Part shown: positions 31,030 to 64,000 of the stretch, piece after piece
Numbering within the stretch: the stretch's first letter is position 1
Layout of the letters: each line of letters starts with the position of its first letter
IMG/VR virus record: IMGVR_UViG_3300017917_001996
Location: 186,001 to 250,000 of that record
Reading direction: 5' to 3' (one strand)
Length of the DNA stretch: 64,000 nucleotides
Notes under the pieces: generated by a model
What the model saw: only the letters and a program-made list of their open reading frames with translations
Databases searched by the model: none
What the model was told of the DNA's origin: nothing
Position numbers and translations under genes: made by a program

Positions 31030-31713
31030 ATGAGAAAGCATAAACATCATATTATTCCTAAGCATGCCGGTGGAACCAATGATCCATCAAATCTAATAGA
31101 ATTGACTATAGAGGAACATGCAGAAGCTCATCGTTTGTTATATGAAACTTACGGTAGGTGGCAAGATCGTGTAGCCTGGCTAAGTTTGTCTGGCATAATG
31201 ACAAACCAAGAAAGGATATATGAGATTTTAAAAAATTCAAATCCCGGCGGGTATAAGCATTCTGAAGAAATAAAAAAACAACTTTCTGAAATGCGTAAAG
31301 GTAATAAAAATCCAATGTTTGGAAAAGTTGCTGCTAATAGTGGAATTAAACGACCTGGTATCGGTGGCCGGAAAAAAGGGTCAGGATGGTCTGACGCAGA
31401 AAGATTAAAACAATTAGAAGTTCGATCTCAACCGGGTTATTATGATTTTACTAAAGATCCGGAGAGGAATAAAAAAATAAGTCAGGCAACTAAAGGTAGA
31501 AAAGGTTCGGCATTAGGAAAAAAATGGTTTCATAATAACGAAATTGAAACATATTCATTTAGTTGTCCTATAGGCTTTATACCTGGTAGGTTACCTGGCA
31601 GAAAATCAAACAAGGAAGGACTGCTCTGGTACAATAACGGAATTGTTAATAAGCAATTTAAAGAAGGACAACAAGTAGAAGGATTTACTCGTGGAAGAAT
31701 TAATAAAAAATAA
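31030..31713 (+). CDS. Free-standing HNH homing endonuclease with NUMOD3 and two C-terminal W-x-N-N..G..(R/P)GR repeats
   Basis: HKHHIIPKHAGGTNDPSNLIELTIEEHAEAH; HSEEIKKQLSE..KGNKNPMFGK. Confidence 0.85.
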   Translation: MRKHKHHIIPKHAGGTNDPSNLIELTIEEHAEAHRLLYETYGRWQDRVAWLSLSGIMTNQERIYEILKNSNPGGYKHSEEIKKQLSEMRKGNKNPMFGKVAANSGIKRPGIGGRKKGSGWSDAERLKQLEVRSQPGYYDFTKDPERNKKISQATKGRKGSALGKKWFHNNEIETYSFSCPIGFIPGRLPGRKSNKEGLLWYNNGIVNKQFKEGQQVEGFTRGRINKK

Positions 31714-32023
31714 CATCGGCCTGCAAATTTTAACAGACACAGGCTGGTCTGATTTTTCAGGACTTCTAGTAAGGGGCAGAAAGAAAACGGTACAAATACA
31801 AACGACAAATAAAAATGTTATATGTACTCTAGATCATAAATTTTTTAAACCTGATTTTACATTTGTTGAAGCACAACAATTAAGACCTCGACAAAAAATT
31901 CTAACAATTAATGGAACAGAACAAGTAGTATCAATTAAGATTCTTGACGAAAGAGAAGTATACGACTTATTTCATGTCTCGAAAAATTATAGATTTTATG
32001 CAAACGGTATACTTGCTAAAAAT
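31691..32023 (+). mobile_element. Split intein C-fragment (111 aa)
   Basis: TxxH at residues 46-49; terminal Asn111 followed by +1 Cys at 32024. Confidence 0.85.
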
Positions 32024-32758
32024 TGCGAATTCTTAATTTTCGACGAAACACTGATCAATGCTTCTACCTTATTAGAAATGCAGGGCACAGACCCAATCGA
32101 AAAACAAGGACAAGTACGCTGGTATCATAAACCCAAACGTGGAAGTACCTATGTGGTTGCCTTAGATCCAAGTCTTGGTACAGGTGGCGATGCTGCTGCT
32201 ATACAAGTTGTTGAACTGCCAGCATGTAAGCAAGTTGCCGAGTGGCAACACAATAAAACAGATATACGTGGGCAAATTCGAGTACTTAAAGAAATCTGTA
32301 ATTATCTTTACGAAGAAATTGGAACACAAAACGACATCTACTACAGTGTTGAGAACAACACCTTAGGAGAAGCTGCCCTAATTGCTATCAGTGAAGTTGG
32401 AGAAGAAAACATACGTGGATCTTTTGCCAGTGAACCGCGTAATGGTCAGTCTCGTAAATATAGAAGAGGTTTTACAACTACAAACAAATCAAAACTAGCA
32501 GCCTGTGCTAAGTTAAAGAGCTTGATAGAAAGCAAGAAGATGACTATATCTAGCTCTAATTTAATTTCGGAACTTAAGAACTTTGTATCTCACGGCAGCT
32601 CGTTTGAAGCTAAAATTGGCGAAACTGACGACCTAGTAATGGCAATGATCCTGGTTATCCGTGTGATACAGTATCTACAGAGCTTTGATCCCACTCTAGA
32701 CAGTTATGTTAAGGATCACGACGAGTTCATAGAACCCATGCCCTTTATTTTGATGTAA
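31691..32758 (+). CDS. terL: Intein C-fragment (111 aa) fused to the terminase large subunit C-terminal nuclease half
   Basis: GTG start with AAGGA SD; CTLDH (block B), VYDL and YANGILAKN|CEFL (blocks F/G); RNase H-like nuclease motifs VALDPS, VENN, TDDLVMA. Confidence 0.9.
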   Translation: MEELIKNNIGLQILTDTGWSDFSGLLVRGRKKTVQIQTTNKNVICTLDHKFFKPDFTFVEAQQLRPRQKILTINGTEQVVSIKILDEREVYDLFHVSKNYRFYANGILAKNCEFLIFDETLINASTLLEMQGTDPIEKQGQVRWYHKPKRGSTYVVALDPSLGTGGDAAAIQVVELPACKQVAEWQHNKTDIRGQIRVLKEICNYLYEEIGTQNDIYYSVENNTLGEAALIAISEVGEENIRGSFASEPRNGQSRKYRRGFTTTNKSKLAACAKLKSLIESKKMTISSSNLISELKNFVSHGSSFEAKIGETDDLVMAMILVIRVIQYLQSFDPTLDSYVKDHDEFIEPMPFILM

Positions 32759-35995: not shown

Positions 35996-37060
35996 ATGGC
36001 CAAACCTTTTGACCTAAGTAAATTTAGAAAAAACATCACAAAAAGTATTGAAGGCTTGAGTATCGGATTTAACGATCCAACAGACTGGGTTAGTACTGGT
36101 AACTATGCACTTAACTATTTGATCTCTGGAGACTTCCATCGCGGAGTACCCTTGGGCAAAGTTACTGTGTTTGCTGGCGAATCTGGCGCAGGCAAATCTT
36201 ATATCTGTTCAGGTAATTTAATTCGACACGCACAAGAACAAGGCATCTATCCAATTCTAATCGATTCGGAAAATGCTCTAGACGAAGCTTGGTTACACGC
36301 ACTAGGCGTTGACACCAGTGAAGAAAAACTATTAAAAGTTAATATGGCTATGATTGATGACGTAGCCAAAATGATTTCGGAGTTTGTCAAAGAATACAAA
36401 ACATTACCCGATGACCAGCGTCCTAAGGTCTTGTTCATTCTCGACAGCCTTGGTATGTTGTTGACACCTACTGATGTTAATCAGTTTGAAGCAGGTGAAA
36501 TGAAAGGTGACTTGGGTCGTAAGCCTAAAGCACTGACAGCACTTGTTCGTAACTGTGTTAACATGTTTGGTAGCTTGAACATTGGTCTGGTTGCCACTAA
36601 CCATACCTATGCTAGCCAGGACATGTTTGACCCGGATGACAAGATCAGCGGTGGTCAAGGCTTTATCTATGCCAGCTCGATTGTTGTTGCTATGAAGAAA
36701 CTCAAACTTAAAGAGGACGATGATGGCAATAAGATTAGTGAGGTACGCGGTATCCGTGCTGCTTGTAAGATCATGAAAACTCGTTACGCAAAACCTTTTG
36801 AAAGCGTACAGGTTAAGATTCCCTACGAGACAGGTATGAATCCGTATTCTGGTCTCACCGATCTGGTTGAAGCCAAAGGTATGCTTAAGAAGGAAGGCAA
36901 TAGTCTTGTGTATACTACAACAGACGGCGAAATCATTAAGAAGTTCCGCAAGGGCTGGGAACGTAATGATGATGGTTGCTTGGATGTGATTATGAAAGAT
37001 ATTACTGCAAATCCTCAAGCCATAAGTAGTCAAGCAACAGTTGAAGAAACTGTTGAATAA
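35996..37060 (+). CDS. uvsX: RecA-like recombinase (UvsX)
   Basis: GESGAGKS, LIDSENA, FILDSLG, VATNHTY, SGGQGFIYASS, KTRYAKPF. Confidence 0.92.
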   Translation: MAKPFDLSKFRKNITKSIEGLSIGFNDPTDWVSTGNYALNYLISGDFHRGVPLGKVTVFAGESGAGKSYICSGNLIRHAQEQGIYPILIDSENALDEAWLHALGVDTSEEKLLKVNMAMIDDVAKMISEFVKEYKTLPDDQRPKVLFILDSLGMLLTPTDVNQFEAGEMKGDLGRKPKALTALVRNCVNMFGSLNIGLVATNHTYASQDMFDPDDKISGGQGFIYASSIVVAMKKLKLKEDDDGNKISEVRGIRAACKIMKTRYAKPFESVQVKIPYETGMNPYSGLTDLVEAKGMLKKEGNSLVYTTTDGEIIKKFRKGWERNDDGCLDVIMKDITANPQAISSQATVEETVE

Positions 37061-52964: not shown

Positions 52965-54092
52965 ATGCAAAAACAGTCTTTTCGTTACCTAGAAGATTAT
53001 ATTGAATACCTTGCTGGATTCCCTATGACTAATAATGTTAGGCCGGGTACAGTGAGCTTGGCTAGATACGACACGCAGATTGTTGCTAGTATTGCAAACC
53101 AAACGTTCAATGGTACCGGCTTCAGTGATCGACAAGCCCTACTAGCTCATAAGTTGGTAGTAAAGTATAAAAGGCAATTTGCCAACAATGGAATTCTAAT
53201 TGGCGAACATGAAGAAGACCCAAAGTTTCGATTACCACTTAGACAAGTTGATCGTTCTAAAATTATTACCCTTAATGATAAAAAAATTGTTGTACGTTTT
53301 CCCTACGACGTTAAAATGATTGATGCTCTACGAGAGTATGGTAAAAAGATTCCCAGCGAGTTGAGATTTAACAAACCCAATCGACAGTGGGAAGCTGACA
53401 TTACTGAACCAAGAGTTCTTTGGGCCTGCGAGTTTGCTGATAAATATGAGTTTGAGATTGATACGGTATTGCTAGAGCTTAGAGAAAAGATCGATCATTG
53501 CCAACAAATAAGGTATGCCATTGAGCTGGATTATGTTGACAATCAGATAGTTATTTCTAATGCTGAGTCTAGTCTATTAGATTATATTAACAGCAACGTT
53601 GGTGGACTTGGCAAAGACAATCTACTAAACTTAATTGACCAAAGTAGCATTTTAGGCTACACGGTTAGTGAAAAGATCATTACACTCTATGACTTCGGCC
53701 AAGTTGACAAAAGGTTAGCACTAAAGAAAGAAAGTCATTTTCCTTGGAATGACGAAGGCAGCTTTGAAAAAATCGTAGACTATGCTGAATGGTCGCAAAG
53801 ATATCCTATATTTGTTTTTGATCCATTGAACGAAAATAAACCTAATAACCCAGTCCTTGAAAAATTAAAAAATCATTTTAAAGACGAGTTAGAAGTAGTC
53901 GGCGCTCGACAAAAACGTATCGATTACCAAAATAAGAAGTGTGTATACTTAACCCACTGGCATTCTAGCTGGCAAATGAAGATTCCTTTGCTGGTTACAC
54001 TAACAGGGCTAATGGTTGGGTTAAAGAAACAACACATACTTCAGCACTCAGAAAAGATTGTATTTTCTTCTGAGATTCTCTATAATCCATAA
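52965..54092 (+). CDS. Hypothetical protein with a possible HARP-like segment, upstream of UvsW
   Basis: VVRFPYDVKMIDALRE...RFNKPNRQWE. Confidence 0.6.
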   Translation: MQKQSFRYLEDYIEYLAGFPMTNNVRPGTVSLARYDTQIVASIANQTFNGTGFSDRQALLAHKLVVKYKRQFANNGILIGEHEEDPKFRLPLRQVDRSKIITLNDKKIVVRFPYDVKMIDALREYGKKIPSELRFNKPNRQWEADITEPRVLWACEFADKYEFEIDTVLLELREKIDHCQQIRYAIELDYVDNQIVISNAESSLLDYINSNVGGLGKDNLLNLIDQSSILGYTVSEKIITLYDFGQVDKRLALKKESHFPWNDEGSFEKIVDYAEWSQRYPIFVFDPLNENKPNNPVLEKLKNHFKDELEVVGARQKRIDYQNKKCVYLTHWHSSWQMKIPLLVTLTGLMVGLKKQHILQHSEKIVFSSEILYNP

Positions 54093-54093
54093 T

Positions 54094-55587
54094 ATGCCTG
54101 AATGTATACTAGAAATACTTGACGAAGTAAACGTAAAAATTAAAGGGTTGGATTTAGACAGCCGTCGCCAACTAGTCAATCGATATAAATTTGAAATTCC
54201 TGGAGCAAGGTATTTGCCTGCTGTACGTCTAGGTCGTTGGGATGGCAAAGTAAGTTATTTTCAACTCAGTGGCAGTACTTATATTAACCTGTTGCCGGAA
54301 ATTTTACCTTGGTTAGAAGAACGGGGCTACAATGTTGAACTAGAAGATCAACGTGATTATCGCACACAGTTCAGCTTTGAGCAAGTACACGAAAAAAGTT
54401 TTGAGCACATACTGTGGCCCAAAGGACATCCTGCTGAAGGAAAGCCTATCATGCTACGTGACTACCAAGTTGAGGTAGTTAATAAGTTCTTGTCCAATCC
54501 ACAGTGTATACAGGAAATCGCCACTGGTGCTGGTAAGACAATTATGACTGCTGCCTTGAGCAATGCAGTTAGTCCTTATGGCCGTAGCATTGTTATTGTA
54601 CCTAACAAAGACCTAGTTCGCCAAACAGAAAAAGACTACATTAACATGCAACTGGATGTTGGTGTTTACTTTGGCGACCGCAAAGAATACAATAGGCGGC
54701 ACACTATCTGCACTTGGCAAAGTCTTAATGTTATGCTTAAGAATACCAAGAACCACGAAGCAGAAGTTACTATACACGAATTCTTAGAGGATGTAGTGTG
54801 CGTGATCGTTGACGAAGTGCACATGGCCAAGGCTGATGTACTTAAACAACTGCTAACAGGTCCTATGTCTCGAGTGCCGCTACGTTGGGGTCTAACTGGT
54901 ACAATACCCAAAGAGAAATATGAATTTATGAGCTTGTTCTGTAGTATTGGACAAGTCATTGGACGTCTCAGAGCCAGCGAACTGCAAGAGCAAGGTGTGC
55001 TGGCGCAGTGCCATGTTAACATTGTTCAGTTAGTTGAGTATGCAGAATACAGCAACTATCAAAGCGAATTGAAGTACTTGCTGGAAAACGATAAAAGAAT
55101 CGCTTACATCAGTAAGATGATCAGCAGAATCAAGGATTCGGGTAACACATTGATTCTAGTGGACAGGATTGGTGCAGGCAAGGCATTACAAGCTCATCTC
55201 AGCTCGTTGTTTAGTGTATTAAAAGATGCACCCGACGTAGTGTTTATTTCGGGCAGTACCAAGTCTGCTGATCGTCAAGATGAATACGAACAAGTTAGCA
55301 CAGCAAATAACAAGGTTATGATTGCTACCTACGGTGTAGCTGCTGTGGGCATTAACATTCCACGAATTTTCAATCTAGTGCTAATTGAGCCTGGCAAGAG
55401 CTTTGTGCGTGTTATCCAAAGTATCGGGCGTGGCATTCGTAAAGCCGAAGACAAAGACTTTGTACAGATCTGGGACATTACCAGCACCTGCAAGTTTGCC
55501 AAGAGACACCTAACACAGAGAAAGAACTTTTACAAAGAAGCCAACTATCCATTTACCATAGACAAAGTTGACTATCAAAAACAATAA
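54094..55587 (+). CDS. uvsW: SF2 DNA helicase, UvsW-like
   Basis: LRDYQ, ATGAGKT, IVDEVH, GLTGT, GINIP, QSIGRGIR; promoter TTGTAT-N17-TATAAT at 54058-54086. Confidence 0.9.
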   Translation: MPECILEILDEVNVKIKGLDLDSRRQLVNRYKFEIPGARYLPAVRLGRWDGKVSYFQLSGSTYINLLPEILPWLEERGYNVELEDQRDYRTQFSFEQVHEKSFEHILWPKGHPAEGKPIMLRDYQVEVVNKFLSNPQCIQEIATGAGKTIMTAALSNAVSPYGRSIVIVPNKDLVRQTEKDYINMQLDVGVYFGDRKEYNRRHTICTWQSLNVMLKNTKNHEAEVTIHEFLEDVVCVIVDEVHMAKADVLKQLLTGPMSRVPLRWGLTGTIPKEKYEFMSLFCSIGQVIGRLRASELQEQGVLAQCHVNIVQLVEYAEYSNYQSELKYLLENDKRIAYISKMISRIKDSGNTLILVDRIGAGKALQAHLSSLFSVLKDAPDVVFISGSTKSADRQDEYEQVSTANNKVMIATYGVAAVGINIPRIFNLVLIEPGKSFVRVIQSIGRGIRKAEDKDFVQIWDITSTCKFAKRHLTQRKNFYKEANYPFTIDKVDYQKQ

Positions 55588-55598
55588 AGAAAAACAAT

Positions 55599-56108
55599 AT
55601 GTCAAGAATTTTAAACTTAGATACCAATCGTGCATACGATATGAACGAGATACCCGAAGAGGTTGATGACCTTAGGTTCTGTGTGCTAGATAACAGCGAC
55701 CCGAAGAATCCTGATTACTTTTTTATACCATTAATCTTTTTAGAGAGCTTTAATAGCCCTGCACTGGTACTAAAAATTGGACCTTGGACAGTTAAAATGC
55801 CTGTGGACTGGCAACTGTTAATTGGCGAAAAGGATCTGGGCGATCTAGAAGTAGTACCATTGACCAGTATTAATGATCGCGGCTTTTGTGCATTTTGCTT
55901 TAATCCTATTAGCAGCTTTAGACCTGAATTTCATCCAGTTGAAATTGTAGACATCTATCAAGATGTTAAATGGTATTTTCCTAAACTCAAGCCCGGACAG
56001 ATGTTGGCAGTACCATTGGAGTCAGATACTGATAAACCTATGTGCGTGTATTTTGTCAAAGAGATTAGCCGAATGAGCGAAGTAGTTGATTTTAGCAAGG
56101 CATGGTAA
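55599..56108 (+). CDS. Hypothetical protein, possibly a degenerate Hint fold
   Basis: Beta-rich pattern LKIGPWTVKMPVDWQLLI...EIVDIYQDVKWYFP. Confidence 0.55.
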   Translation: MSRILNLDTNRAYDMNEIPEEVDDLRFCVLDNSDPKNPDYFFIPLIFLESFNSPALVLKIGPWTVKMPVDWQLLIGEKDLGDLEVVPLTSINDRGFCAFCFNPISSFRPEFHPVEIVDIYQDVKWYFPKLKPGQMLAVPLESDTDKPMCVYFVKEISRMSEVVDFSKAW

Positions 56109-56120
56109 TATAATACAGCT

Positions 56121-56579
56121 ATGAGTGATAAACTAAACATTGCCAACGAAATGCGAGCCTTTGATAACAAGGATCGCGGTTTCTATGATAGCCTAACTGA
56201 AGAAGAACGCAAGAAGTTCAGCACCTACTTAATGCTCAAGTGGGGCGCCAACGTAGAAGGCAGTCCCGAATTGCAAGAATGGTATTTGCGTGTGGTCAAT
56301 GATCGTGTAAATCTTAACTTTTTTGATTTAGGAAGACATCCTAAGTTGCAGTGGCTTCTGTGTACAACGGTGAGCCCTGGGCTAGGAGTAAAACGTCACT
56401 ATTGGATTACTTCCAAGCGTGGTAGTACCAGCAAAGCATATAAGTTTATTGAAAAACAATATCCTCATCTTAAACCCGATGAAATTGAACTGATGTTGCA
56501 GATCAACAGTCCAGATCAAATTAAGAGTTATGCACGAGCATTGGGTTGGGATGATAAACAGATCAAATCTGAGCTATGA
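56121..56579 (+). CDS. gp62: Clamp-loader small subunit (T4 gp62-like)
   Basis: FSTYLMLKW...HPKLQWLLC...KRHYWI; promoter TTGATT-N17-TATAAT at 56086-56114. Confidence 0.55.
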   Translation: MSDKLNIANEMRAFDNKDRGFYDSLTEEERKKFSTYLMLKWGANVEGSPELQEWYLRVVNDRVNLNFFDLGRHPKLQWLLCTTVSPGLGVKRHYWITSKRGSTSKAYKFIEKQYPHLKPDEIELMLQINSPDQIKSYARALGWDDKQIKSEL

Positions 56580-57280
56580 TTGTGGCAGAACCTGTAGTCA
56601 AATATACTTGTAAATTTTGTGGGAAGAGTTTTTCAAAAGAAACTACACTGATCTCTCACGTCTGTGAAAAGAAGCGCAGAGCACAACAAGAAAAAGAAGT
56701 CGGCGTACAGCTAGGTCTGCAAGCCTACTTGATGTTCTATCAAAGTACCCAAGCAGGCACTAAAAATAAAACGTATCAAGACTTTGCGGAAAGTCCATAC
56801 TATACTGCATTTGTAAAGTTTGGGCGCTATTGTGTGTCTATTAAGTGTATTAACTTTGCATCATTTACTCGCTGGCTACTACAGAACAACAAAAAGTTAG
56901 ACTACTGGTGTTCAGATAAGTTGTATGAAGAATGGATGGCAGAATACTTAAAGCGAGAGCCTGCACAAGATGCACTGGAACGAGCCATCAAGGAGATAAC
57001 CGAGTATGCAGAAGATCATCCAGAGCTTAAAAACGGCTTTCGGGATTACTTTAGGTATGCTAATAGTAATCGAATTTGTCATCATATCTGTAGCGGCAGG
57101 ATTAGTCCTTGGGTGGTGTTTAACTGCGCTAGTGGGGTAGAGTTTGTTGAGCGATTACCAGCAAATCAAGTTAACCTACTGTTACCGTGGATTGACCCAA
57201 CATACTGGAACGGGTTTTTTAAAGATAATCCCAACGATGTTCAATGGGCTAGGAGCATCTTAGCAGCAGCAGGATTATAA
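56576..57280 (+). CDS. Zinc-finger protein of the replication cluster (remote gp59 helicase-loader resemblance possible)
   Basis: YTCKFCGKSF...L..HVC; C-terminal SGRISPWVVF. Confidence 0.55.
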   Translation: MIVAEPVVKYTCKFCGKSFSKETTLISHVCEKKRRAQQEKEVGVQLGLQAYLMFYQSTQAGTKNKTYQDFAESPYYTAFVKFGRYCVSIKCINFASFTRWLLQNNKKLDYWCSDKLYEEWMAEYLKREPAQDALERAIKEITEYAEDHPELKNGFRDYFRYANSNRICHHICSGRISPWVVFNCASGVEFVERLPANQVNLLLPWIDPTYWNGFFKDNPNDVQWARSILAAAGL

Positions 57281-57281
57281 T

Positions 57282-57659
57282 ATGTCACAACTTAAAACAT
57301 GTGCCAAGTGCAATGAAACAAAAACGCTGGCTGAATTCTGCAAAGCCAGCGGCGGCAACTACTATAGATCCGAGTGCAGGGCGTGTGAAAAAGCATTAGC
57401 TAAAGTCAGAAAGCAAATTAAAGAATCTGCGCCACCGGTACCAGATAACTATTCCTGCCCTATATGCAATAGAACCGAAGCTGAAGTAAAAGGCCGCGGA
57501 GGTAAGAAGTCAGGTACATGGTGTTGTGATCATGATCATGTAACTAACAAGTTCCGGGGGTGGTTGTGTCATCAATGCAATAGAGCATTGGGCGGAATGA
57601 ATGACAGTGTCGATCGACTAAAAAATTCAATTAAGTATTTGGAAAGTTCAAGGAAATGA
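57282..57659 (+). CDS. Endonuclease VII-type (His-Me finger) nuclease
   Basis: CPIC...CCDHDH..NKFRGWLCHQCNRALG; N-terminal CAKC...CRAC. Confidence 0.82.
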   Translation: MSQLKTCAKCNETKTLAEFCKASGGNYYRSECRACEKALAKVRKQIKESAPPVPDNYSCPICNRTEAEVKGRGGKKSGTWCCDHDHVTNKFRGWLCHQCNRALGGMNDSVDRLKNSIKYLESSRK

Positions 57660-58252
57660 AATTCACCAGTGACGTTGATATAGACTTTGCAGATAGACAA
57701 AAAGTCTTAAGTTTAATCCGGCATGTGCCTGCGACTATAGCTGAAGGTACAGATCGTACAGCACACAATACTGGAATTTACGTTACTGACATTCCTGTAG
57801 ACCCATTTACAGGGCGTAGTGCAATAGATTATCGAGAAGCTGAACGTCGTGGTTATATTAAGCTAGACTTTCTTAATGTTGGGTTATATAACCAAGTTAA
57901 AGACGAATCGCATTTGCTAGAACTTATGCACCGCGAGCCACCTTGGCACAGGCTCTACGAGCCGGAGTTTTGTTCACAGTTGATCCACGTGAACAATCAT
58001 TATGATACACTGATTAAAATGCCCGAGGCTGTTAACAGTATTCCTAGGCTAGCTATGTTCTTGGCTATCATCCGCCCTTCTAAGCGACATCTAATAGGTA
58101 AGACTTGGGCAGAAGTTGCTCGGACTATATGGGACAAGCCCACGGATAACAGCTACTACTTTAAAAAGAGCCATAGCGTAGGCTACAGTCATCTAGTAGT
58201 AGTTAATATGAATTTGTTGGATCTAAACGGTCTTACGAATCAAGGTAATTGA
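57656..58252 (+). CDS. Miniature DNA polymerase III alpha (DnaE, family C) catalytic-core protein, 198 aa
   Basis: Collinear DnaE motifs DVDIDF, HNTGIYV, YIKLDFLNV, LAIIRP, YYFKKSHSVGY. Confidence 0.8.
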   Translation: MKFTSDVDIDFADRQKVLSLIRHVPATIAEGTDRTAHNTGIYVTDIPVDPFTGRSAIDYREAERRGYIKLDFLNVGLYNQVKDESHLLELMHREPPWHRLYEPEFCSQLIHVNNHYDTLIKMPEAVNSIPRLAMFLAIIRPSKRHLIGKTWAEVARTIWDKPTDNSYYFKKSHSVGYSHLVVVNMNLLDLNGLTNQGN

Positions 58253-58594
58253 CCGACGCTTACTGCGTTTTGATGCTATCTCTTTGAGATTAATCTGAGG
58301 TCCCATGCGGATCTCAACGTCTTTGCTGTTCATAGTTTTAACGCAAAACTTGAATTCAGCCCATTCTTTCTTTAGGAAAACGTTAATAGGAATTATCCTA
58401 TTGCTTTCCCACCACCATTGCTCTCCTAATTCTAGGAAACGCTTCTTCTGTTCAGGGAACTTTATACTACCAAAGTCGTAAATGGTAGTGATTTGCTCAT
58501 CGGAATTTTGTATGATTCCGATGTATTCGTTGCCCCCGTAAACCAAATAGGTTATAAAAGGGTACCGTGCGAGTAAGGGTTCGATTTCTTCCAC
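58223..58594 (-). CDS. Conserved hypothetical protein (WWWESNR.IPI motif)
   Basis: Coherent ORF convergent with and overlapping the mini-DnaE by 30 nt. Confidence 0.7.
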   Translation of the reverse strand: MEEIEPLLARYPFITYLVYGGNEYIGIIQNSDEQITTIYDFGSIKFPEQKKRFLELGEQWWWESNRIIPINVFLKKEWAEFKFCVKTMNSKDVEIRMGPQINLKEIASKRSKRRSITLIRKTV

Positions 58595-58613: not shown

Positions 58614-59108
58614 ATGATAACAATCTATTTATATCCAAATATAATTGACGTTCAATTTTGGGACGTAACTCTTTTCAGTGCAAGGAACCAATATATGTAT
58701 GCTAAACCTGTAGTCGTGTACCAAGGAATTGACAATCCTCTGCAGGTTCGCGTCAAGAACCAGGAGCAAACTCCGGTGAACATGACACCGTATTTACTGC
58801 AGGCCGAAATACAAGACCCTGATAGTTTCCTAACAGTAGAATCCTTTGGTATTCAATTTCAAAATGTTACCAAGGGTATAGGAACATTTGTAATCCCAAA
58901 AGATTTAGTAAATGGTTTAGAGCAGCGACGTTACAAGTTAACGTTTAAAGCTATAAACAAATCAAGCAACCAAGAACAGCCAGCATATATTGACCACAAT
59001 TATATGGTTCCGATGGATTTAATAGTGTTACCTGGTTATTATTCGACAATGCCTCCGGATGCCGAGGAAACCGACGACTTCTTAAAAATTGATGGTGGAA
59101 CAATATGA
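58614..59108 (+). CDS. Virion structural protein (Ig-like / BppU-N-like)
   Basis: Late promoter CTAAATA at 58599; VYQGIDNPLQVRVKN pattern. Confidence 0.5.
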   Translation: MITIYLYPNIIDVQFWDVTLFSARNQYMYAKPVVVYQGIDNPLQVRVKNQEQTPVNMTPYLLQAEIQDPDSFLTVESFGIQFQNVTKGIGTFVIPKDLVNGLEQRRYKLTFKAINKSSNQEQPAYIDHNYMVPMDLIVLPGYYSTMPPDAEETDDFLKIDGGTI

Positions 59109-62100
59109 GCTTAAACAACCAAGTTTTAAATTTAGATGCAAGACAGATCCTTTTAAAAAGAGGAAATGCAATAGTTAGCCAAGGTTACGTGGGTCCAATT
59201 GGCGAAATAACTTTAGATACAACTCTTAATACACTACGTATTCACGACGGTGTTACACCCGGCGGTACTATTATTCCTACTGCTGCTAACGTTGCAGCCG
59301 AAGTCACTGATGCAGTTAATGTAATTGGCGGAACTACTATTTCGGGACAGATTGCTACAGCACTTTTACCAGTATATGCAAATATTGCATTAGTAAATGC
59401 AAATGTATCTAGTTTAATTGGCAATGGCCCAACAACACTTAACACTCTAGCAGAATTGGCTGCTGCGGTTGATAACGATCCAGATTTTGGTGCTAAAGTT
59501 TTGCTAGCATTAACACAGGTACGTGCCAATGTTACCAATGAAGTTAACCGTGCAATTAACGCTGAACAAGTATTACAAACAGCGATCAATAATGAAGTTT
59601 CGGCTAGAACCGCAGCAAATGCAGTATTAGTCAGTTTGATAGGCACCCAATCTAACGCATATATTGCTGCTGACAGCGTACTTCAAAATAATATTAACAC
59701 AGAATCCGGATTACGAGTTGCTGCTTTTAATCAATTACAAACTGATATTAGTAATGAGGCTACTGCAAGATCTTCTGCTGACACAGCATTACAAGGCAAT
59801 ATCATTGCTGAAGCCACTGCAAGAGCTTCTGCAGATACAACACTGCAAACAAATATCAACAACGAAGCAACAACAAGATCTTCTGCTGATGCAGCACTCC
59901 AAGCAAACATTGATTCGTTGAACAATAGTTTATCAACTGTTGCTAAAACTGGTTTGTATTCAGACCTTTCCGGTAAGCCAACTCTATTAAGTCAGTTTAC
60001 CAATGATACAAATTTTGCAAACGTTTCTTATGTTGACACGCAAATTTCCAACATAATAAATGGTGCACCGTCAACTCTGGATACCTTAAAAGAAATTGGT
60101 GATGCATTCCAGTCAGCTGACGGTAATCTACTAGCAGCAATAAATTCTCTAACCAGCTCGAGCTCTTCGACAGTTGATGCCGAAGAAGCAGCTCGAATTG
60201 CAGCAGATACTGCTCTCCAGGCAAACATCGATGCTGAGACTACTGCTCGTATTTCTGCAGATACAACACTGCAAACAAATATCAACAACGAAGCAACAGC
60301 TCGTCTAAATGCAGACGCAGCGTTACAAGGTAATATTGATGCAGAAGCTACTGCTCGTATTGCAGTAGATACTGCACTACAAGGAAACATTTCTGCTGAA
60401 GTTACCGCTCGCACTGTGGCAGATACTGCACTACAAGGCAATATTGATGCAGAAGCTACAGCACGTACTAGTGCAGATACCACTTTACAGACTAACATTA
60501 ATAATGAAGCTACCACTAGGGCAAATGCAGATATAGAATTACAAGGTAATATTATTGCTGAAGAGACAGCCCGAATTGCAGCCGACTTGTCATTGCAAGG
60601 AAATATTACTGCCGAAACTACTGCACGTATTGCAGCAGATTCTGCATTGCAGGCTAATATTACTGCTGAGGAAACAGCCCGCATTGCTGCCGACACAGCA
60701 CTACAAGGAAACATTACTGCTGAAATTAGTGCAAGAGTAAGTGCCGATACTGCACTACAGGGTAACATAACTGCCGAAGAAACAGCAAGAATTGCAGCCG
60801 ATACAGCACTGCAAGGAAATATTACTGCTGAAGCTACTGCTCGTTCTAGTGCCGACACTACATTGCAGACAAACATTAACAATGAAGCCACTGCAAGAGC
60901 AAATGCTGATACTGCACTACAAGGCAATATTGATGCAGAAGCTACAGCACGTATTGCAGCAGACTCTGCATTGCAAGCAAATATTGAGGCAGAAGCAACG
61001 GCTCGTCAGTCTTTACAATCAAATTTACAAAGTCAAATTAATAACATCATTAGTAATGTTGACCCTGGTGCCTTAGACAGCTTAACGGAGATCGTTACAG
61101 CATTCCAAGGTTCTGATGGTAATATTATAACGGCACTTAATACGTTAAGTTCTGGCACAGGCTCTAATATTGCTGCTGAAGCTAATGCTCGTATTGCAAG
61201 TGACTTGTCACTACAGAGTAACATTGAAACACTAACAAATAGTCTAGCCAATGTTGCATTTACTGGAAACTATTCTGACTTATCAAATGTTCCACCAGCT
61301 CTGAATACTGGTGATGTGCAATTCCTCGACGACGAGATTTATACTCAAACAGGAAGGATGTCATTCTATACAGAAGGTGCAGTATTTCCTGAAATTAACA
61401 GAATTGACTTCAGTACAGATCAATTTGGTATTGATGTTACAGGTGAAATACAACTTTATGCTGGCACCAATCTAAGAGTTGTTACAAACAATGCTGTAAA
61501 TGGTAGAACTTGGGAATTCAAAGATACTGGATCTTTAGAACTCCCGGGCATTGAAGACGATACTACACCAGTGCTGGATTTCTTTGGTGGCCCAAGCGGC
61601 TCCTTAGGAAACCATATTGTAACACTAGCCAGCGATTGGACACTGAAAGTCAAGGCTCGTGCCGATGCTGCCAACGAAGGTCACTTATGGTTAGAAGCAG
61701 GACAGAATACCAAGATTGAAATCAATGGCTCGACTTCTAACATAAACTTAATTGCCAGCGATGGAGTGTCCACAAGCACTTGGACCTTTGATAGCAACGG
61801 TGATCTAACTGCTGCCGGTAATGTAATCAGCGGTAATGGCAGAATTAATTTTGTAGCTAACAGTTCCGGCGACGGTTACGGTTACACAACCATGGAACTA
61901 CGACCCGACACCAGTATTTCCAGCGATCAATACATTATCATTGATCCTACTGCTCCAAGCCACATACACATTCGTGCAGGCGGCACCCAGGATCAAAGTG
62001 GCGCACAGCTATTCTTAGGCGGCGAGAAAAACCACTTTACTGTTACCGATGGTGGCCTAACCAGAATGCAAACTGAGCAGCTGATGTCTACTGCTACCTA

Positions 62101-63067
62101 TAGCTTTAATACCACATTGGGCTTTAGTTCTGCGGTATGGAGCAGCGATGGATTAAATCATACGATTCTAATCACCGATCCTACTGTTGATGTTTATACA
62201 GCAGTCTGGGCATTGACCGGCGAAAGTTTAATTGAACTTTATGACGGTAACAACTATTATACTGTAACTTATAGTGGTTATGGTACTCCTGGACATCCTG
62301 CTCCTGTGACTTTAACTGTCAACGAAGCACCGCCTTCGAGTCCAATTAATCTAAATAGTATCTACATTGATATTAGACAGACTAGACAATCCTATGTTGA
62401 AGTCAATGGCACTGATATCCGTATGGAGGCCATGGACGACATCAGAATTTATAGTAACGATGTGTTTAGACTGTATAACAACTCAACAGTTGATCCAATT
62501 GAAATAATTGTTAATGCCGATGTTGGACCAGAAAAGCGATGGACGTTTAATGTTGGCGGAACAATAACCTTCCCCGACGATACAAATCAGTCAACTGCCT
62601 GGCTTGGGTCAATCGATCGAATTGAAAGCGGGTTAGCTAATGTAACTGTTGCCAACACTGGCGTAGTAAGTTTACCAGCGGTAAGCAATAGTCAGGTTAC
62701 AATTTCTGGTGCAACCAAAACTGTTAAAGGTAATCCATATTCAGTAAGAAGTGCCTATAGCAGTGAATACGAAATTTGGAAGGCCAGCTCTGAAGATGTT
62801 GTAGCAGCTAAGGTCACTGTCAGATTACACAATGACTATTATACTTACACTGAATTGTTTGATGTAATGCTAGTCAAAGAAGCAACTAACAATGCTAATG
62901 TCAGCTTTAGTGTGGGACCTAGAATTAAGTCCAATGATTCCTATCCAGACGGCGTTGTTGATGTAAGACTAAGCGACGGAAATAAACTGACCTTGTACTA
63001 TGCAAGTGTTCAAGGTGATGCCAGCTTCTACACATTTGATGCTGTTGAATTTACAAAAACTGTTTAA
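59105..63067 (+). CDS. Long tail fibre: Mtd-N-like head, 18-residue coiled-coil repeats, beta-rich C-terminus
   Basis: LLKRG...GEITLDTTLNTLRIHDGVTPGG; AExTARxxADTALQGNI repeats; APxTLDTLxEI motifs. Confidence 0.75.
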   Translation: MSLNNQVLNLDARQILLKRGNAIVSQGYVGPIGEITLDTTLNTLRIHDGVTPGGTIIPTAANVAAEVTDAVNVIGGTTISGQIATALLPVYANIALVNANVSSLIGNGPTTLNTLAELAAAVDNDPDFGAKVLLALTQVRANVTNEVNRAINAEQVLQTAINNEVSARTAANAVLVSLIGTQSNAYIAADSVLQNNINTESGLRVAAFNQLQTDISNEATARSSADTALQGNIIAEATARASADTTLQTNINNEATTRSSADAALQANIDSLNNSLSTVAKTGLYSDLSGKPTLLSQFTNDTNFANVSYVDTQISNIINGAPSTLDTLKEIGDAFQSADGNLLAAINSLTSSSSSTVDAEEAARIAADTALQANIDAETTARISADTTLQTNINNEATARLNADAALQGNIDAEATARIAVDTALQGNISAEVTARTVADTALQGNIDAEATARTSADTTLQTNINNEATTRANADIELQGNIIAEETARIAADLSLQGNITAETTARIAADSALQANITAEETARIAADTALQGNITAEISARVSADTALQGNITAEETARIAADTALQGNITAEATARSSADTTLQTNINNEATARANADTALQGNIDAEATARIAADSALQANIEAEATARQSLQSNLQSQINNIISNVDPGALDSLTEIVTAFQGSDGNIITALNTLSSGTGSNIAAEANARIASDLSLQSNIETLTNSLANVAFTGNYSDLSNVPPALNTGDVQFLDDEIYTQTGRMSFYTEGAVFPEINRIDFSTDQFGIDVTGEIQLYAGTNLRVVTNNAVNGRTWEFKDTGSLELPGIEDDTTPVLDFFGGPSGSLGNHIVTLASDWTLKVKARADAANEGHLWLEAGQNTKIEINGSTSNINLIASDGVSTSTWTFDSNGDLTAAGNVISGNGRINFVANSSGDGYGYTTMELRPDTSISSDQYIIIDPTAPSHIHIRAGGTQDQSGAQLFLGGEKNHFTVTDGGLTRMQTEQLMSTATYSFNTTLGFSSAVWSSDGLNHTILITDPTVDVYTAVWALTGESLIELYDGNNYYTVTYSGYGTPGHPAPVTLTVNEAPPSSPINLNSIYIDIRQTRQSYVEVNGTDIRMEAMDDIRIYSNDVFRLYNNSTVDPIEIIVNADVGPEKRWTFNVGGTITFPDDTNQSTAWLGSIDRIESGLANVTVANTGVVSLPAVSNSQVTISGATKTVKGNPYSVRSAYSSEYEIWKASSEDVVAAKVTVRLHNDYYTYTELFDVMLVKEATNNANVSFSVGPRIKSNDSYPDGVVDVRLSDGNKLTLYYASVQGDASFYTFDAVEFTKTV
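60176..61039 (+). repeat. 16 tandem degenerate 54-bp (18-aa) coding repeats
   Basis: Counted from the translation; a further 7 copies lie at 59534-59911. Confidence 0.85.
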
Positions 63068-63077
63068 GGTATAAGCA

Positions 63078-64000
63078 ATGACTAAAAAATTATTAAGAAT
63101 AGACGGAATACAAATTGGCGGAGCTTCGCTAACAGCTACTGGTAATACTGTGGTCACTAGTGGACCAGTTGATTTATCTAATAGTACCATTGCATGGACT
63201 TCAGTTAGTGACAAACCTATTTTTTCAAATATTGCCTTAAGCGGTAGTTATGCTGATCTATCAAATATACCAGTTACTGTAGAAACAGCAGCTATAATAG
63301 GAACTGACTTGCAGCTAACATACACTGATTCAACTACTGCTAATTTAGGATCAGTTATGGGCGCAACTGGACCACAAGGCATTCAGGGCGACACAGGAGC
63401 CACTGGACCACAAGGAATTCAGGGCGTTCAAGGCGACACAGGAGCCACTGGACCACAAGGGATTCAAGGGATTCAAGGGATTCAGGGAGATGTTGGAGCT
63501 ACAGGTTTAACTGGAGCCACTGGTGCCCAAGGCGACACAGGAGCCACAGGTCCACAAGGCATTCAAGGTGATGTAGGTGCCACTGGTGCACAAGGCGTTC
63601 AGGGCGTTCAAGGCGATACAGGAGCCACAGGTCCACAAGGGATTCAAGGGATCCAAGGCGACACAGGAGCCACAGGAGCCACAGGTCCACAAGGGATTCA
63701 AGGCGACACAGGAGCCACAGGTCCACAAGGCATTCAGGGCGATGTAGGAGCCACAGGTCCACAAGGGATTCAAGGCGACACAGGAGCCACAGGTCCACAA
63801 GGCATCCAAGGAGATACGGGTGCTACCGGTTTAACTGGAGCAACAGGTGCCCAAGGAAATACAGGATTAGGGTTTAAGATAGCTAAAACTTACTCTAGTG
63901 TTGCTGCTTTAACGGCCGATACTATTCCCACAGGGATCAATCAAGGTGAGTTTGCGTTAATTGACACTGGTGATGTTGAAAATGCAGAAAATTCTAGATT
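63078..64000 (+). CDS. Collagen-like fibre protein, 3'-truncated by the window; not in the ORF track
   Basis: [10 protein letters not shown]... then G-X-Y repeats; frame is open to the end of the window. Confidence 0.85.
63360..63866 (+). repeat. Collagen Gly-X-Y repeat, about 56 triplets ([12 protein letters not shown])
   Basis: Near-identical DNA repeats ggcgacacaggagccacaggtccacaagg. Confidence 0.9.

What the first reader, a model, noticed from the sequence alone, without database searches (positions are those of the whole stretch)
57656..58252. 198-aa miniature Pol III alpha that keeps all three catalytic aspartates
Seen: DVDIDF, HNTGIYV, KLDFL, IIRP and FKKSHS motifs in DnaE order within about 175 aa. 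Known: in E. coli DnaE the equivalent motifs (D401/D403, D555, FNKSH) span about 370 aa, and the enzyme also has PHP, thumb, clamp-binding and OB domains that are missing here. The gene sits with UvsW, a gp62-like clamp-loader subunit and a Zn-finger protein. Inferred: this is not the replicase. It may be a primase substitute or a short-patch/terminal nucleotidyltransferase in a T4-like replisome. I recall similar small proteins in related jumbo phages but cannot verify their characterisation.
Basis: partly seen in the sequence, partly recalled or inferred. Interest (0 to 1): 0.8.

Follow-up and report, generated by a model that had tools for sequence, protein, structure and literature searches.

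The report
Half of a split mini Pol III
This 198-residue phage protein is real and conserved, but it is only the metal-binding half of a two-gene, stripped-down relative of the bacterial replicative polymerase that was described by computation in 2021 and has no reported biochemical test that I could find.

Summary
The ORF (57656-58252, +, 198 aa) and all five motifs are there. In 84 diverse homologues D6, D8, D10, K69, D71, R140 and P141 are invariant. Profile-profile comparison, a confident AlphaFold model (pLDDT 95) and Foldseek all point only to Pol III alpha (C-family polymerases).

It is not a complete miniature enzyme. It starts exactly at the DxDxD strand and lacks the GRGS nucleotide-binding part of the palm. 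In cultured relatives (RaK2, 121Q, PA5oct, Atu_ph07, Slickus01) that part is a separate ~170-aa gene 11-182 kb away, next to the gp44 clamp loader in the four where I read that neighbourhood. Three natural fusion proteins (375-376 aa) join the two halves in DnaE order.

Iyer et al. 2021 (PMC7824862) already described this split minimal Pol III alpha in group 2.2 jumbo phages, alongside a family B polymerase.

The primase-substitute idea fails. A gp61-like primase and a DnaB/gp41 helicase lie on the contig that overlaps the end of the source contig, as in relatives.

I did not find the N-terminal half in the 108 kb I could read of this genome.

Verdict: a new member of a known, biochemically untested family.

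The parts
57656..58252 (+). Gene for the C-terminal (metal-binding and finger-stub) unit of the split minimal Pol III alpha, 198 aa. Its ATG overlaps the stop of the upstream gene (ATGA).
   Evidence: ORF. phrog_11778 E 4.5e-60. AlphaFold pLDDT 95, pTM 0.88. Foldseek top 8 PDB hits are all Pol III alpha. Top ~20 BFVD hits are all phage DnaE-type polymerases.
57671..57685 (+). Codons for D6-V-D8-I-D10, the DxDxD strand that carries the first two catalytic carboxylates. It is the very first structural element of the protein.
   Evidence: Invariant in 84 homologues. Through the natural fusion proteins it aligns with D503/D505/D507 of full-length phage DnaE (hhalign prob 98.8, E 1.2e-16). Strand 7-11 in the model.
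57764..57775 (+). Codons for H37-N-T-G40, equivalent to the HAAG motif of DnaE. Only 27 residues separate it from the DxDxD against about 107 in full-length DnaE. From my memory of the Lamers 2006 domain map, the missing ~80 residues are the thumb.
   Evidence: hhalign aligns residues 35-144 with DnaE 612-743 (prob 90.8, E 1.2e-6). Spacing in DnaE.
57860..57868 (+). Codons for K69-L-D71, the KxD strand with the third catalytic aspartate (equivalent of K657/D659 in the phage DnaE used here).
   Evidence: K69 and D71 invariant. Aligned.
58073..58078 (+). Codons for R140-P141 (the RPG motif of the DnaE fingers).
   Evidence: Invariant. Aligned to DnaE R739-P740.
58157..58174 (+). Codons for F168-K-K-S-H-S173 (the FN[KR]xH finger helix). 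About 80 residues of the fingers between RPG and this helix are missing, as is everything after the helix.
   Evidence: Residues 152-187 match Pol III alpha-sized families phrog_405 (positions 773-809 of 1190, E 4e-5), phrog_11165 and phrog_12219. K170 and H173 are at least 90% conserved.
54058..55587 (+). UvsW-type helicase, the first gene of the conserved module that ends with the C unit.
   Evidence: Pfam ResIII, DEAD, Helicase_C and UvsW_N. 46-54% identical to the RaK2, PA5oct and Phosso helicases in the same position.
55599..57280 (+). Three conserved small genes of unknown function between UvsW and the C unit: 55599-56108 (phrog_11279), 56121-56579 (phrog_11758) and 56576-57280 (phrog_11058, N-terminal C2H2-like zinc finger).
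   Evidence: PHROGs. Syntenic homologues in RaK2, PA5oct and Phosso. No similarity to any part of DnaE (hhalign prob below 1%).
57282..57659 (+). Endonuclease VII-like gene lying between the zinc-finger gene and the C unit. It is a sporadic insertion, not part of the module.
   Evidence: PF02945 E 1e-13. phrog_2633. Adjacent to the C unit in only 1 of 79 IMG/VR relatives.
58223..58594 (-). Convergent 123-aa gene (phrog_11637, unknown function) whose 3' end overlaps the C-unit gene by 30 bases. It is the most constant neighbour of the C unit.
   Evidence: PHROGs. Present next to the C unit in 67 of 79 IMG/VR relatives and in RaK2, PA5oct, Phosso and Atu_ph07. A reverse gene also follows the fused form. 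No lead from the ESM Atlas.

Best explanation
The gene encodes the C-terminal unit of the two-gene 'minimal DNA polymerase III alpha' of T4-related (group 2.2) jumbo phages.

Shown: the unit carries the metal-binding carboxylates (D6, D8, D71, plus D10), K69 and a stub of the fingers (RP, FKKSH). It has no PHP domain, clamp-binding domain or OB domain, and about 80 residues are missing between the DxDxD and the HAAG-type motif.

Inferred: those missing residues are the thumb.

Shown: the polypeptide begins exactly at the DxDxD strand. The preceding part of the same catalytic fold, with the GRGS loop that holds the triphosphate in C-family polymerases, is a separate ~170-aa protein in relatives.

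Inferred: the two proteins assemble into one Pol-beta-like nucleotidyltransferase active site, as they do covalently in rare natural fusions. The pair acts as a small, non-processive accessory DNA polymerase (gap filling, repair or recombination-dependent synthesis) beside the phage's family B replicase. It is not the replicase and not a primase. Alone, the 198-aa protein should bind metal but not be a competent polymerase.
For: Identity:
- Full-length phrog_11778 match.
- hhalign of the family against four full-length phage DnaE gives prob 90.8, E 1.2e-6 over residues 35-144.
- The DxDxD aligns with the DnaE catalytic DxD through the fusion proteins (prob 98.8, E 1.2e-16).
- The AlphaFold model (pLDDT 95) finds only Pol III alpha in the PDB (top 8, prob 0.82-0.98) and only phage DnaE-type polymerases in BFVD.

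Selection on the catalytic residues: they are invariant in 84 diverse sequences.

Split:
- The partner unit (Atu_ph07 gp316 region, PA5oct EST35_0288, RaK2 ORF162, 121Q gp56) ends in ...EFLK.
- It matches DnaE up to the residues just before the DxD (prob 98.2, E 5.9e-14) and hits PF07733 above threshold.
- The genus counts of phage records holding each unit are almost identical: Escherichia 34/34, Pseudomonas 11/11, Klebsiella 11/10, Erwinia 8/8, Salmonella 8/8, Xanthomonas 4/4.

Fusion:
- P0176, P0271 and P0272 (375-376 aa, 78-81% identical, from ENA and Logan) join N and C in DnaE order.
- The model of P0176 hits only C-family polymerases (15 hits, prob 1.00, E down to 3.5e-6).

Not the replicase or a primase:
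- Atu_ph07 has a split family B polymerase.
- gp61 primase and gp41 helicase lie just downstream in relatives and on the overlapping contig of this genome.

Literature: the same reading is given in Iyer et al. 2021.
Against: - The N-terminal unit was not found in the window, nor in the 44-kb contig that continues it (tblastn and motif scans). The first 186 kb of the 250-kb source contig could not be read. So the partner is unproven for this genome. Three other contigs of the same metagenome carry an N unit, but the sample holds several related phages.
- No physical interaction or activity has been shown for any member. I found no experimental paper.
- Plain sequence searches of the C unit against Pfam, NCBIfam and PDB sequences find nothing. 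The homology rests on profile-profile, fold and motif evidence.
- Foldseek TM-scores are modest (0.30-0.46), as expected with two large deletions.
- The fused model is only moderately confident (pLDDT 73).
- With no thumb and most of the fingers gone, templated DNA synthesis is an assumption.
Confidence: 0.65

Rival explanations
1. One reading: a self-sufficient miniature polymerase, either a primase substitute or a short-patch/terminal transferase, working alone.
For: All catalytic carboxylates and K69 are present and invariant. The protein folds confidently on its own in prediction.
Against: It lacks the GRGS triphosphate-binding part of the fold, which is a separate conserved gene in relatives and is fused to it in three natural proteins. 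A normal gp61 primase and gp41 helicase are present.
Confidence: 0.07
2. The N and C pair is a nucleotidyltransferase but not a templated DNA polymerase. For example, it could add nucleotides to DNA or RNA ends, make a nucleotide signal, or modify a protein or nucleic acid.
For: The palm belongs to the Pol-beta-like nucleotidyltransferase superfamily, stated for Pol III alpha by Iyer et al. 2021. That this superfamily includes many non-polymerase enzymes is my own knowledge. The thumb and most of the DNA-holding fingers are absent.
Against: The retained extra motifs (RP, FKKSH) are DnaE finger motifs rather than generic nucleotidyltransferase features. Both genes sit in replication and recombination gene clusters: UvsW, primase and helicase for C, and the gp44 clamp loader for N. 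All fold matches are polymerases.
Confidence: 0.15
3. An inactive relic of a DnaE gene, kept for a structural or regulatory role.
For: Extreme reduction. Some database records call homologues 'virion structural' or 'membrane' proteins, but these are only annotations.
Against: The metal ligands and K69 are invariant, as are R140 and P141, at a mean column identity of 29% across 84 sequences. That is the signature of a working active site.
Confidence: 0.05
4. A gene recently broken by the adjacent Endonuclease VII-like mobile gene, with the missing half just upstream.
For: An endonuclease gene abuts the start codon.
Against: The gene upstream of the endonuclease is the conserved zinc-finger protein, which has no DnaE similarity. 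The endonuclease is present in only 1 of 79 relatives, while the C unit has the same start and length everywhere. The split with a distant N unit is shared by cultured relatives without the endonuclease.
Confidence: 0.02

Closest known systems
Split minimal DNA polymerase III alpha of group 2.2 jumbo phages (Iyer, Anantharaman, Krishnan, Burroughs, Aravind 2021, Viruses 13:63, PMC7824862); C-terminal unit = phrog_11778. Examples are RaK2 ORF124, PA5oct EST35_0220 and Phosso gp437.
   Same: Same length and same start at the DxDxD. The same invariant residues. The same gene module (UvsW, three small genes, C unit, convergent small gene, then primase and helicase). 39-47% identity to the cultured members.
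   Different: It comes from an uncultured phage with no close cultured relative (no megablast match, best 47% protein identity). An Endonuclease VII gene is inserted upstream, and a 1320-aa fibre-like gene and a collagen-like gene lie between it and the primase. Its N-terminal partner has not been located.
Bacterial and phage full-length Pol III alpha (DnaE, DnaE1, PolC; PDB 2hqa, 5fkw, 2hpi, 4iqj, 5lew, 3f2b)
   Same: The palm carboxylates (DxD plus a third D) and the K before the third D. The HAAG-like, RPG and FNKSH-like motifs in the same order. These are the only fold neighbours found.
   Different: No PHP domain, no GRGS segment in the same chain, no thumb (about 80 residues deleted), about 80 residues of the fingers deleted, and nothing after the FNKSH helix, so no clamp-binding, HhH or OB parts. 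It does not reach the Pfam or NCBIfam thresholds.
Natural single-chain minimal form (P0176, P0271, P0272; 375-376 aa, metagenomic)
   Same: Its C half is 34% identical to the window protein and is likewise followed by a reverse-strand gene.
   Different: The N and C units are one polypeptide joined by a short linker. It is known only from short contigs (2.4-5.9 kb).

Membership tests
Split minimal Pol III alpha, C-terminal unit (phrog_11778; Iyer et al. 2021) | Full-length sequence match to the family profile | tested here: met
   phrog_11778 E 4.5e-60, residues 4-189 on profile positions 6-192 of 197.
Split minimal Pol III alpha, C-terminal unit (phrog_11778; Iyer et al. 2021) | About 190-210 aa, starting at the DxDxD strand, with the Mg-binding and template-binding motifs conserved | tested here: met
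   198 aa. D6, D8, D10, K69, D71, R140 and P141 are invariant in 84 sequences.
Split minimal Pol III alpha, C-terminal unit (phrog_11778; Iyer et al. 2021) | Conserved neighbourhood in a T4-related replication cluster (UvsW upstream, primase and helicase downstream) | tested here: met
   Synteny with RaK2, PA5oct and Phosso. The primase and DnaB-like helicase are on the contig that overlaps the source contig end by 82 exact bases.
Split minimal Pol III alpha, C-terminal unit (phrog_11778; Iyer et al. 2021) | A separate N-terminal (GRGS, PF07733) unit encoded elsewhere in the same genome | tested here: inconclusive
   Absent from the 64-kb window and the 44-kb continuation. 186 kb of the source contig was unreadable with these tools. 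N units lie on three other contigs of the same metagenome, but cannot be assigned. Present in the cultured relatives examined.
Split minimal Pol III alpha, C-terminal unit (phrog_11778; Iyer et al. 2021) | Co-occurrence with a family B (T4 gp43-type) polymerase | tested here: inconclusive
   No PolB in the window or in the 44-kb contig. Present in Atu_ph07 and stated for the whole group in PMC7824862.
C-family replicative polymerase (DnaE/PolC) as a complete enzyme | Palm with DxD and a third aspartate | tested here: met
C-family replicative polymerase (DnaE/PolC) as a complete enzyme | GRGS nucleotide-binding segment in the same polypeptide (PF07733 N-terminal part) | tested here: not met
   No such motif in the 198 aa, and no Pfam or NCBIfam hit. 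The motif is in the separate N unit.
C-family replicative polymerase (DnaE/PolC) as a complete enzyme | PHP domain, thumb, full fingers, clamp-binding and OB domains | tested here: not met
   The protein ends 25 residues after FKKSH. There are 27 rather than about 107 residues between DxDxD and H37, and 33 rather than about 115 between RP and the FKKSH histidine. Neighbouring genes show no DnaE similarity.
Primase (DnaG/gp61 TOPRIM type or archaeo-eukaryotic type) | Primase fold or motifs, or absence of a conventional primase in the genome | tested here: not met
   All fold matches are Pol III alpha. A gp61-like primase (zinc ribbon plus TOPRIM-like EGPFD motif; weak DnaG hits) and a DnaB-family helicase lie on the overlapping contig.

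The most novel reading that the evidence does not exclude
The break between the two genes may lie inside the catalytic Pol-beta-like fold, between the GRGS helix and the DxDxD strand. The phage would then build a C-family polymerase active site from two chains encoded tens of kilobases apart, one in the UvsW-primase cluster and one beside the clamp loader. If this two-chain enzyme is a true second DNA polymerase, these T4-like replisomes would use a B-family and a C-family polymerase together. It might, for example, serve UvsW-linked recombination-dependent restart or primer hand-off. It would also be the smallest known C-family polymerase core.
Probability: 0.35. Interest if true: 0.75.

Novelty: new member of a known kind. 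Interest (0 to 1): 0.4.

Why it matters
The family is very common: thousands of sequence clusters in metagenomes, and all RaK2-, 121Q-, PA5oct-, Atu_ph07- and XacN1-like phages found in the phage collection. It keeps a pristine polymerase active site, yet nobody has reported what it does.

It would define the minimal catalytic core of the bacterial-type replicative polymerase. It would also show whether T4-like replisomes employ a second, unrelated polymerase.

For the scan itself, the value lies in three corrections:
- The protein is half an enzyme, not a whole one.
- The concept is already published.
- The primase idea can be dropped.

Two small additions may be new:
- Natural single-chain fusions exist.
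- The split point falls directly before the DxDxD strand.

Tried and rejected
- Plain searches of the C unit found nothing: Pfam, NCBIfam, and hmmsearch of a 16-sequence profile against PDB sequences. Only chance hits at E above 0.1 appeared. Homology needed profile-profile and fold comparison.
- Megablast of the region against cultured phages gave no match.
- Search for the N unit in this genome:
  - tblastn with six N units and a G[RKS]GS motif scan of the window found nothing.
  - The same scans over the whole 43,972-bp continuation contig, read in four steps, found nothing.
  - Three IMG/VR scans with different N-unit queries never returned the 250-kb source contig. Each list is cut at 80 loci, so absence is not proven.
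  - The last 52 bases of the continuation contig match no other IMG/VR contig, so the walk ended there.
- Tested whether the neighbours are other pieces of DnaE: hhalign of four neighbouring proteins against DnaE gave prob below 1%.
- Split by the adjacent endonuclease: rejected.
- MAFFT alignments mixing many N and C units with the fusions mis-stacked the N units on the C half (A5, A6, A9). I used A8, with few C units, so the C half of the fused model is shallowly supported and the model is only pLDDT 73.
- The ESM Atlas gave no lead for the convergent neighbour.
- The PA5oct omics paper has no usable statement on these genes.

Full report
**Observation**

The window holds a single ATG ORF at 57656-58252 on the + strand, 198 aa. 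It contains DVDIDF (residues 6-11), HNTGIYV (37-43), KLDFL (69-73), IIRP (138-141) and FKKSHS (168-173).

The start codon overlaps the stop of the upstream gene (ATGA). The 3' end overlaps a convergent gene by 30 bases.

The ORF is a real gene of a large family:
- It matches the 197-position profile phrog_11778 end to end (E 4.5e-60).
- The word-indexed protein search returned 4958 clusters at 90% identity, the best at 90% identity.
- An exhaustive HMMER search of 1.84 billion representatives gave 401 clusters at 50% identity, nearly all 185-215 aa.

**Source**

The window is bases 186,001-250,000 of a 250,289-bp contig of JGI metagenome 3300017917 (Ga0192394_135679 = IMGVR_UViG_3300017917_001996).

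No cultured phage is close. Megablast finds nothing. The best protein identities are 47% (Agrobacterium phage Atu_ph07), 45% (Sinorhizobium phage Phosso and Pseudomonas phage PA5oct) and 39-42% (the RaK2, 121Q and GAP32 group).

**Is it Pol III alpha?**

Direct sequence searches are silent: Pfam, NCBIfam, and a family profile against PDB sequences.

1. In 84 homologues that are 29-90% identical to the query, D6, D8, D10, K69, D71, R140 and P141 are invariant. H37, G40, K170 and H173 are at least 90% conserved.
Their invariant columns include G-x-x-R-G-S (459-464), D503/D505/D507, H614-A615, K657/D659, R739, and F850/H854.
3. hhalign of the family against that alignment pairs residues 35-144 with DnaE 612-743 (prob 90.8, E 1.2e-6). 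This covers H37, K69/D71 and R140-P141.
4. The DxDxD pairs with D503/D505/D507 when the natural fusion proteins are used as a bridge (prob 98.8, E 1.2e-16).
5. The FKKSH region matches Pol III alpha-sized PHROG families at their positions about 773-809.
6. AlphaFold2 with the 84-sequence alignment gives pLDDT 95 and pTM 0.88.
7. Foldseek finds only Pol III alpha among solved structures: Thermus 4iqj, 2hpi and 3e0d, and M. tuberculosis 5lew and 7pu7, at prob 0.82-0.98 and E 0.003-0.025. Everything below that is noise.
8. Foldseek finds only phage DnaE-type polymerases in BFVD (about 20 hits).

TM-scores are modest (0.30-0.46) because two blocks of about 80 residues are missing relative to DnaE. 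One lies between the DxDxD and H37. From my memory of the Lamers 2006 domain map, this is the thumb. The other lies between RP and FKKSH, which is part of the fingers. The protein stops 25 residues after FKKSH.

The protein starts at the DxDxD strand and has no GRGS segment. Iyer et al. [quoted passage not shown] I recovered the N unit:
- The Atu_ph07 paper names gp316 as 'Pol III alpha'.
- The 177-aa ORF at that position ends ...GVGRGSCVSSY...KYDLDFSEFLE.
- Its homologues in PA5oct (EST35_0288), RaK2 (ORF162) and 121Q (gp56) align with DnaE up to the residues immediately before the DxD (prob 98.2, E 5.9e-14).
- N units pass the Pfam PF07733 threshold and give sub-threshold hits to NCBIfam DnaE models.

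The two units co-occur. The genus counts of phage records with each are almost the same. The units lie at these distances:

| Phage | Distance between N and C units |
|---|---|
| Slickus01 (141-kb genome) | 11 kb |
| 121Q | 31 kb |
| RaK2 | 34 kb |
| PA5oct | 44 kb |
| Atu_ph07 | 182 kb |

The N unit has its own constant neighbourhood: N, a small gene, a GroES-like gene, usually another small gene, then the gp44 clamp loader.

**Rosetta-stone evidence**

One representative in the exhaustive search was 375 aa, with the C-unit match at residues 190-370. Its first half is an N unit, and a short linker joins ...KEFIK to DFDID.

Two more fusion proteins (376 aa, 78-81% identical) come from other sources, so the fusion is not a one-off assembly error. 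All the contigs are short (2.4-5.9 kb).

The AlphaFold model of the fusion is only moderately confident (pLDDT 73). Even so, it hits 15 C-family polymerases and nothing else: E. coli 5fkw and 2hqa, Thermus, M. tuberculosis and PolC, at prob 1.00 and E down to 3.5e-6.

**Context and the primase question**

The module UvsW / phrog_11279 / phrog_11758 / zinc-finger phrog_11058 / C unit / convergent phrog_11637 is shared with RaK2, PA5oct and Phosso. In those phages a gp61 primase and a gp41 helicase follow within 1-3 kb.

In the window a 1320-aa fibre-like gene and a collagen-like repeat gene follow instead. The contig breaks inside the collagen repeats.

The last 82 bases are identical to the first 82 of another contig of the same sample (Ga0192394_131270 = IMGVR_UViG_3300017917_001604, 43,972 bp). 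That contig opens with:
- the end of the collagen gene;
- a 339-aa gp61-like primase (zinc ribbon, EGPFD TOPRIM-like motif, weak DnaG hits);
- a DnaB-family helicase.

The join runs through a repeat, so it is probable rather than certain. It does restore the expected gene order. A conventional primase is therefore present, and the primase-substitute idea is not supported.

**What I could not settle**

The N unit, gp44 and a family B polymerase are absent from the window and from the whole 44-kb continuation.

Three other contigs of the same metagenome carry N units. On one of them I confirmed the GroES and gp44 genes beside the N unit. The sample also holds at least one other C-unit contig and further primase contigs. 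I cannot say which N unit belongs to this genome.

The first 186 kb of the source contig was out of reach.

**Mechanism**

Shown:
- Conserved metal ligands and finger motifs.
- The missing GRGS segment.
- A separate conserved partner in cultured relatives.
- Natural fusions.
- Placement in replication and recombination clusters.

Inferred:
- The two chains complete one Pol-beta-like active site.
- The enzyme is a distributive accessory DNA polymerase.

Its substrate and its role (repair, restart, one-strand synthesis) are unknown. No experimental paper was found.

The neighbours show no DnaE similarity. The adjacent Endonuclease VII gene is a sporadic insertion, present in 1 of 79 relatives.

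**Verdict**

This is a new member of a family already described by computation. Interest is moderate. The open question of what the enzyme does is real and testable, but it is not a discovery of this scan.

Noticed in passing
window 57282-57659 (+): An Endonuclease VII-like gene (PF02945) sits between the conserved zinc-finger gene and the C unit, and its stop overlaps the C-unit start. It is adjacent to the C unit in only 1 of 79 IMG/VR relatives, so it looks like a sporadic, possibly mobile, insertion.
   Followed up: partly
window 58223-58594 (-): A convergent 123-aa gene (phrog_11637, unknown function) overlaps the C-unit 3' end by 30 bases. It accompanies the C unit in 67 of 79 relatives, in cultured phages, and next to the natural fusion gene. 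It may be a functional partner. No family or Atlas lead was found.
   Followed up: partly
P0176, P0271, P0272 (metagenomic; locus L343:1066-2193): Natural single-chain fusions of the N and C units (375-376 aa). These are the complete minimal Pol III alpha core in one polypeptide. I did not see fusions mentioned in the passages of the 2021 paper that I read.
   Followed up: yes
window about 63080-64000 and L009:15423-16634; L175:1-82: A collagen-like (G-x-y repeat) gene runs off the end of the source contig and explains the assembly break. An exact 82-bp overlap links it to a 43,972-bp contig of the same sample. That contig carries a primase, a helicase, ribonucleotide reductase, a DNA ligase and many small genes.
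   Followed up: yes
window 31691-32758 (+): This ORF has a terminase nuclease domain (Terminase_6C, E 3e-9) preceded by weak intein/HINT hits (PF14890, PF07591) at residues 31-107. It may be an intein-containing or split large terminase.
   Followed up: no
L005:5001-5576 (Atu_ph07, MF403008.1 58304-58879): The GenBank CDS of the Atu_ph07 C unit (AUZ94883.1) starts 27 codons downstream of an in-frame ATG. It therefore omits the invariant DIDIDF catalytic strand. This looks like a mis-called start.
   Followed up: partly
window 59105-63067 (+): A 1320-aa protein with many tandem alanine- and threonine-rich coiled repeats (fibre-like; weak Bactofilin hit in the precomputed table) lies where relatives have a short virion structural gene between the C unit and the primase.
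   Followed up: no
window 35996-37060 (+): A RecA/UvsX-like recombinase (PF00154, E 1e-12).
   Followed up: no
L337:15415-15594 (end of the 44-kb continuation contig): The contig ends in sequence with a tRNA T-arm-like motif (GGTTCGAATCC), perhaps a tRNA cluster that stopped the assembly. The last 52 bases have no match in any other IMG/VR contig.
   Followed up: partly
L007 (Alishewanella phage Slickus01, OQ508957.1): A 141-kb non-jumbo phage carries both units only 11 kb apart. The C unit lies about 1.5 kb from the clamp loader. The system is therefore not restricted to jumbo genomes.
   Followed up: partly
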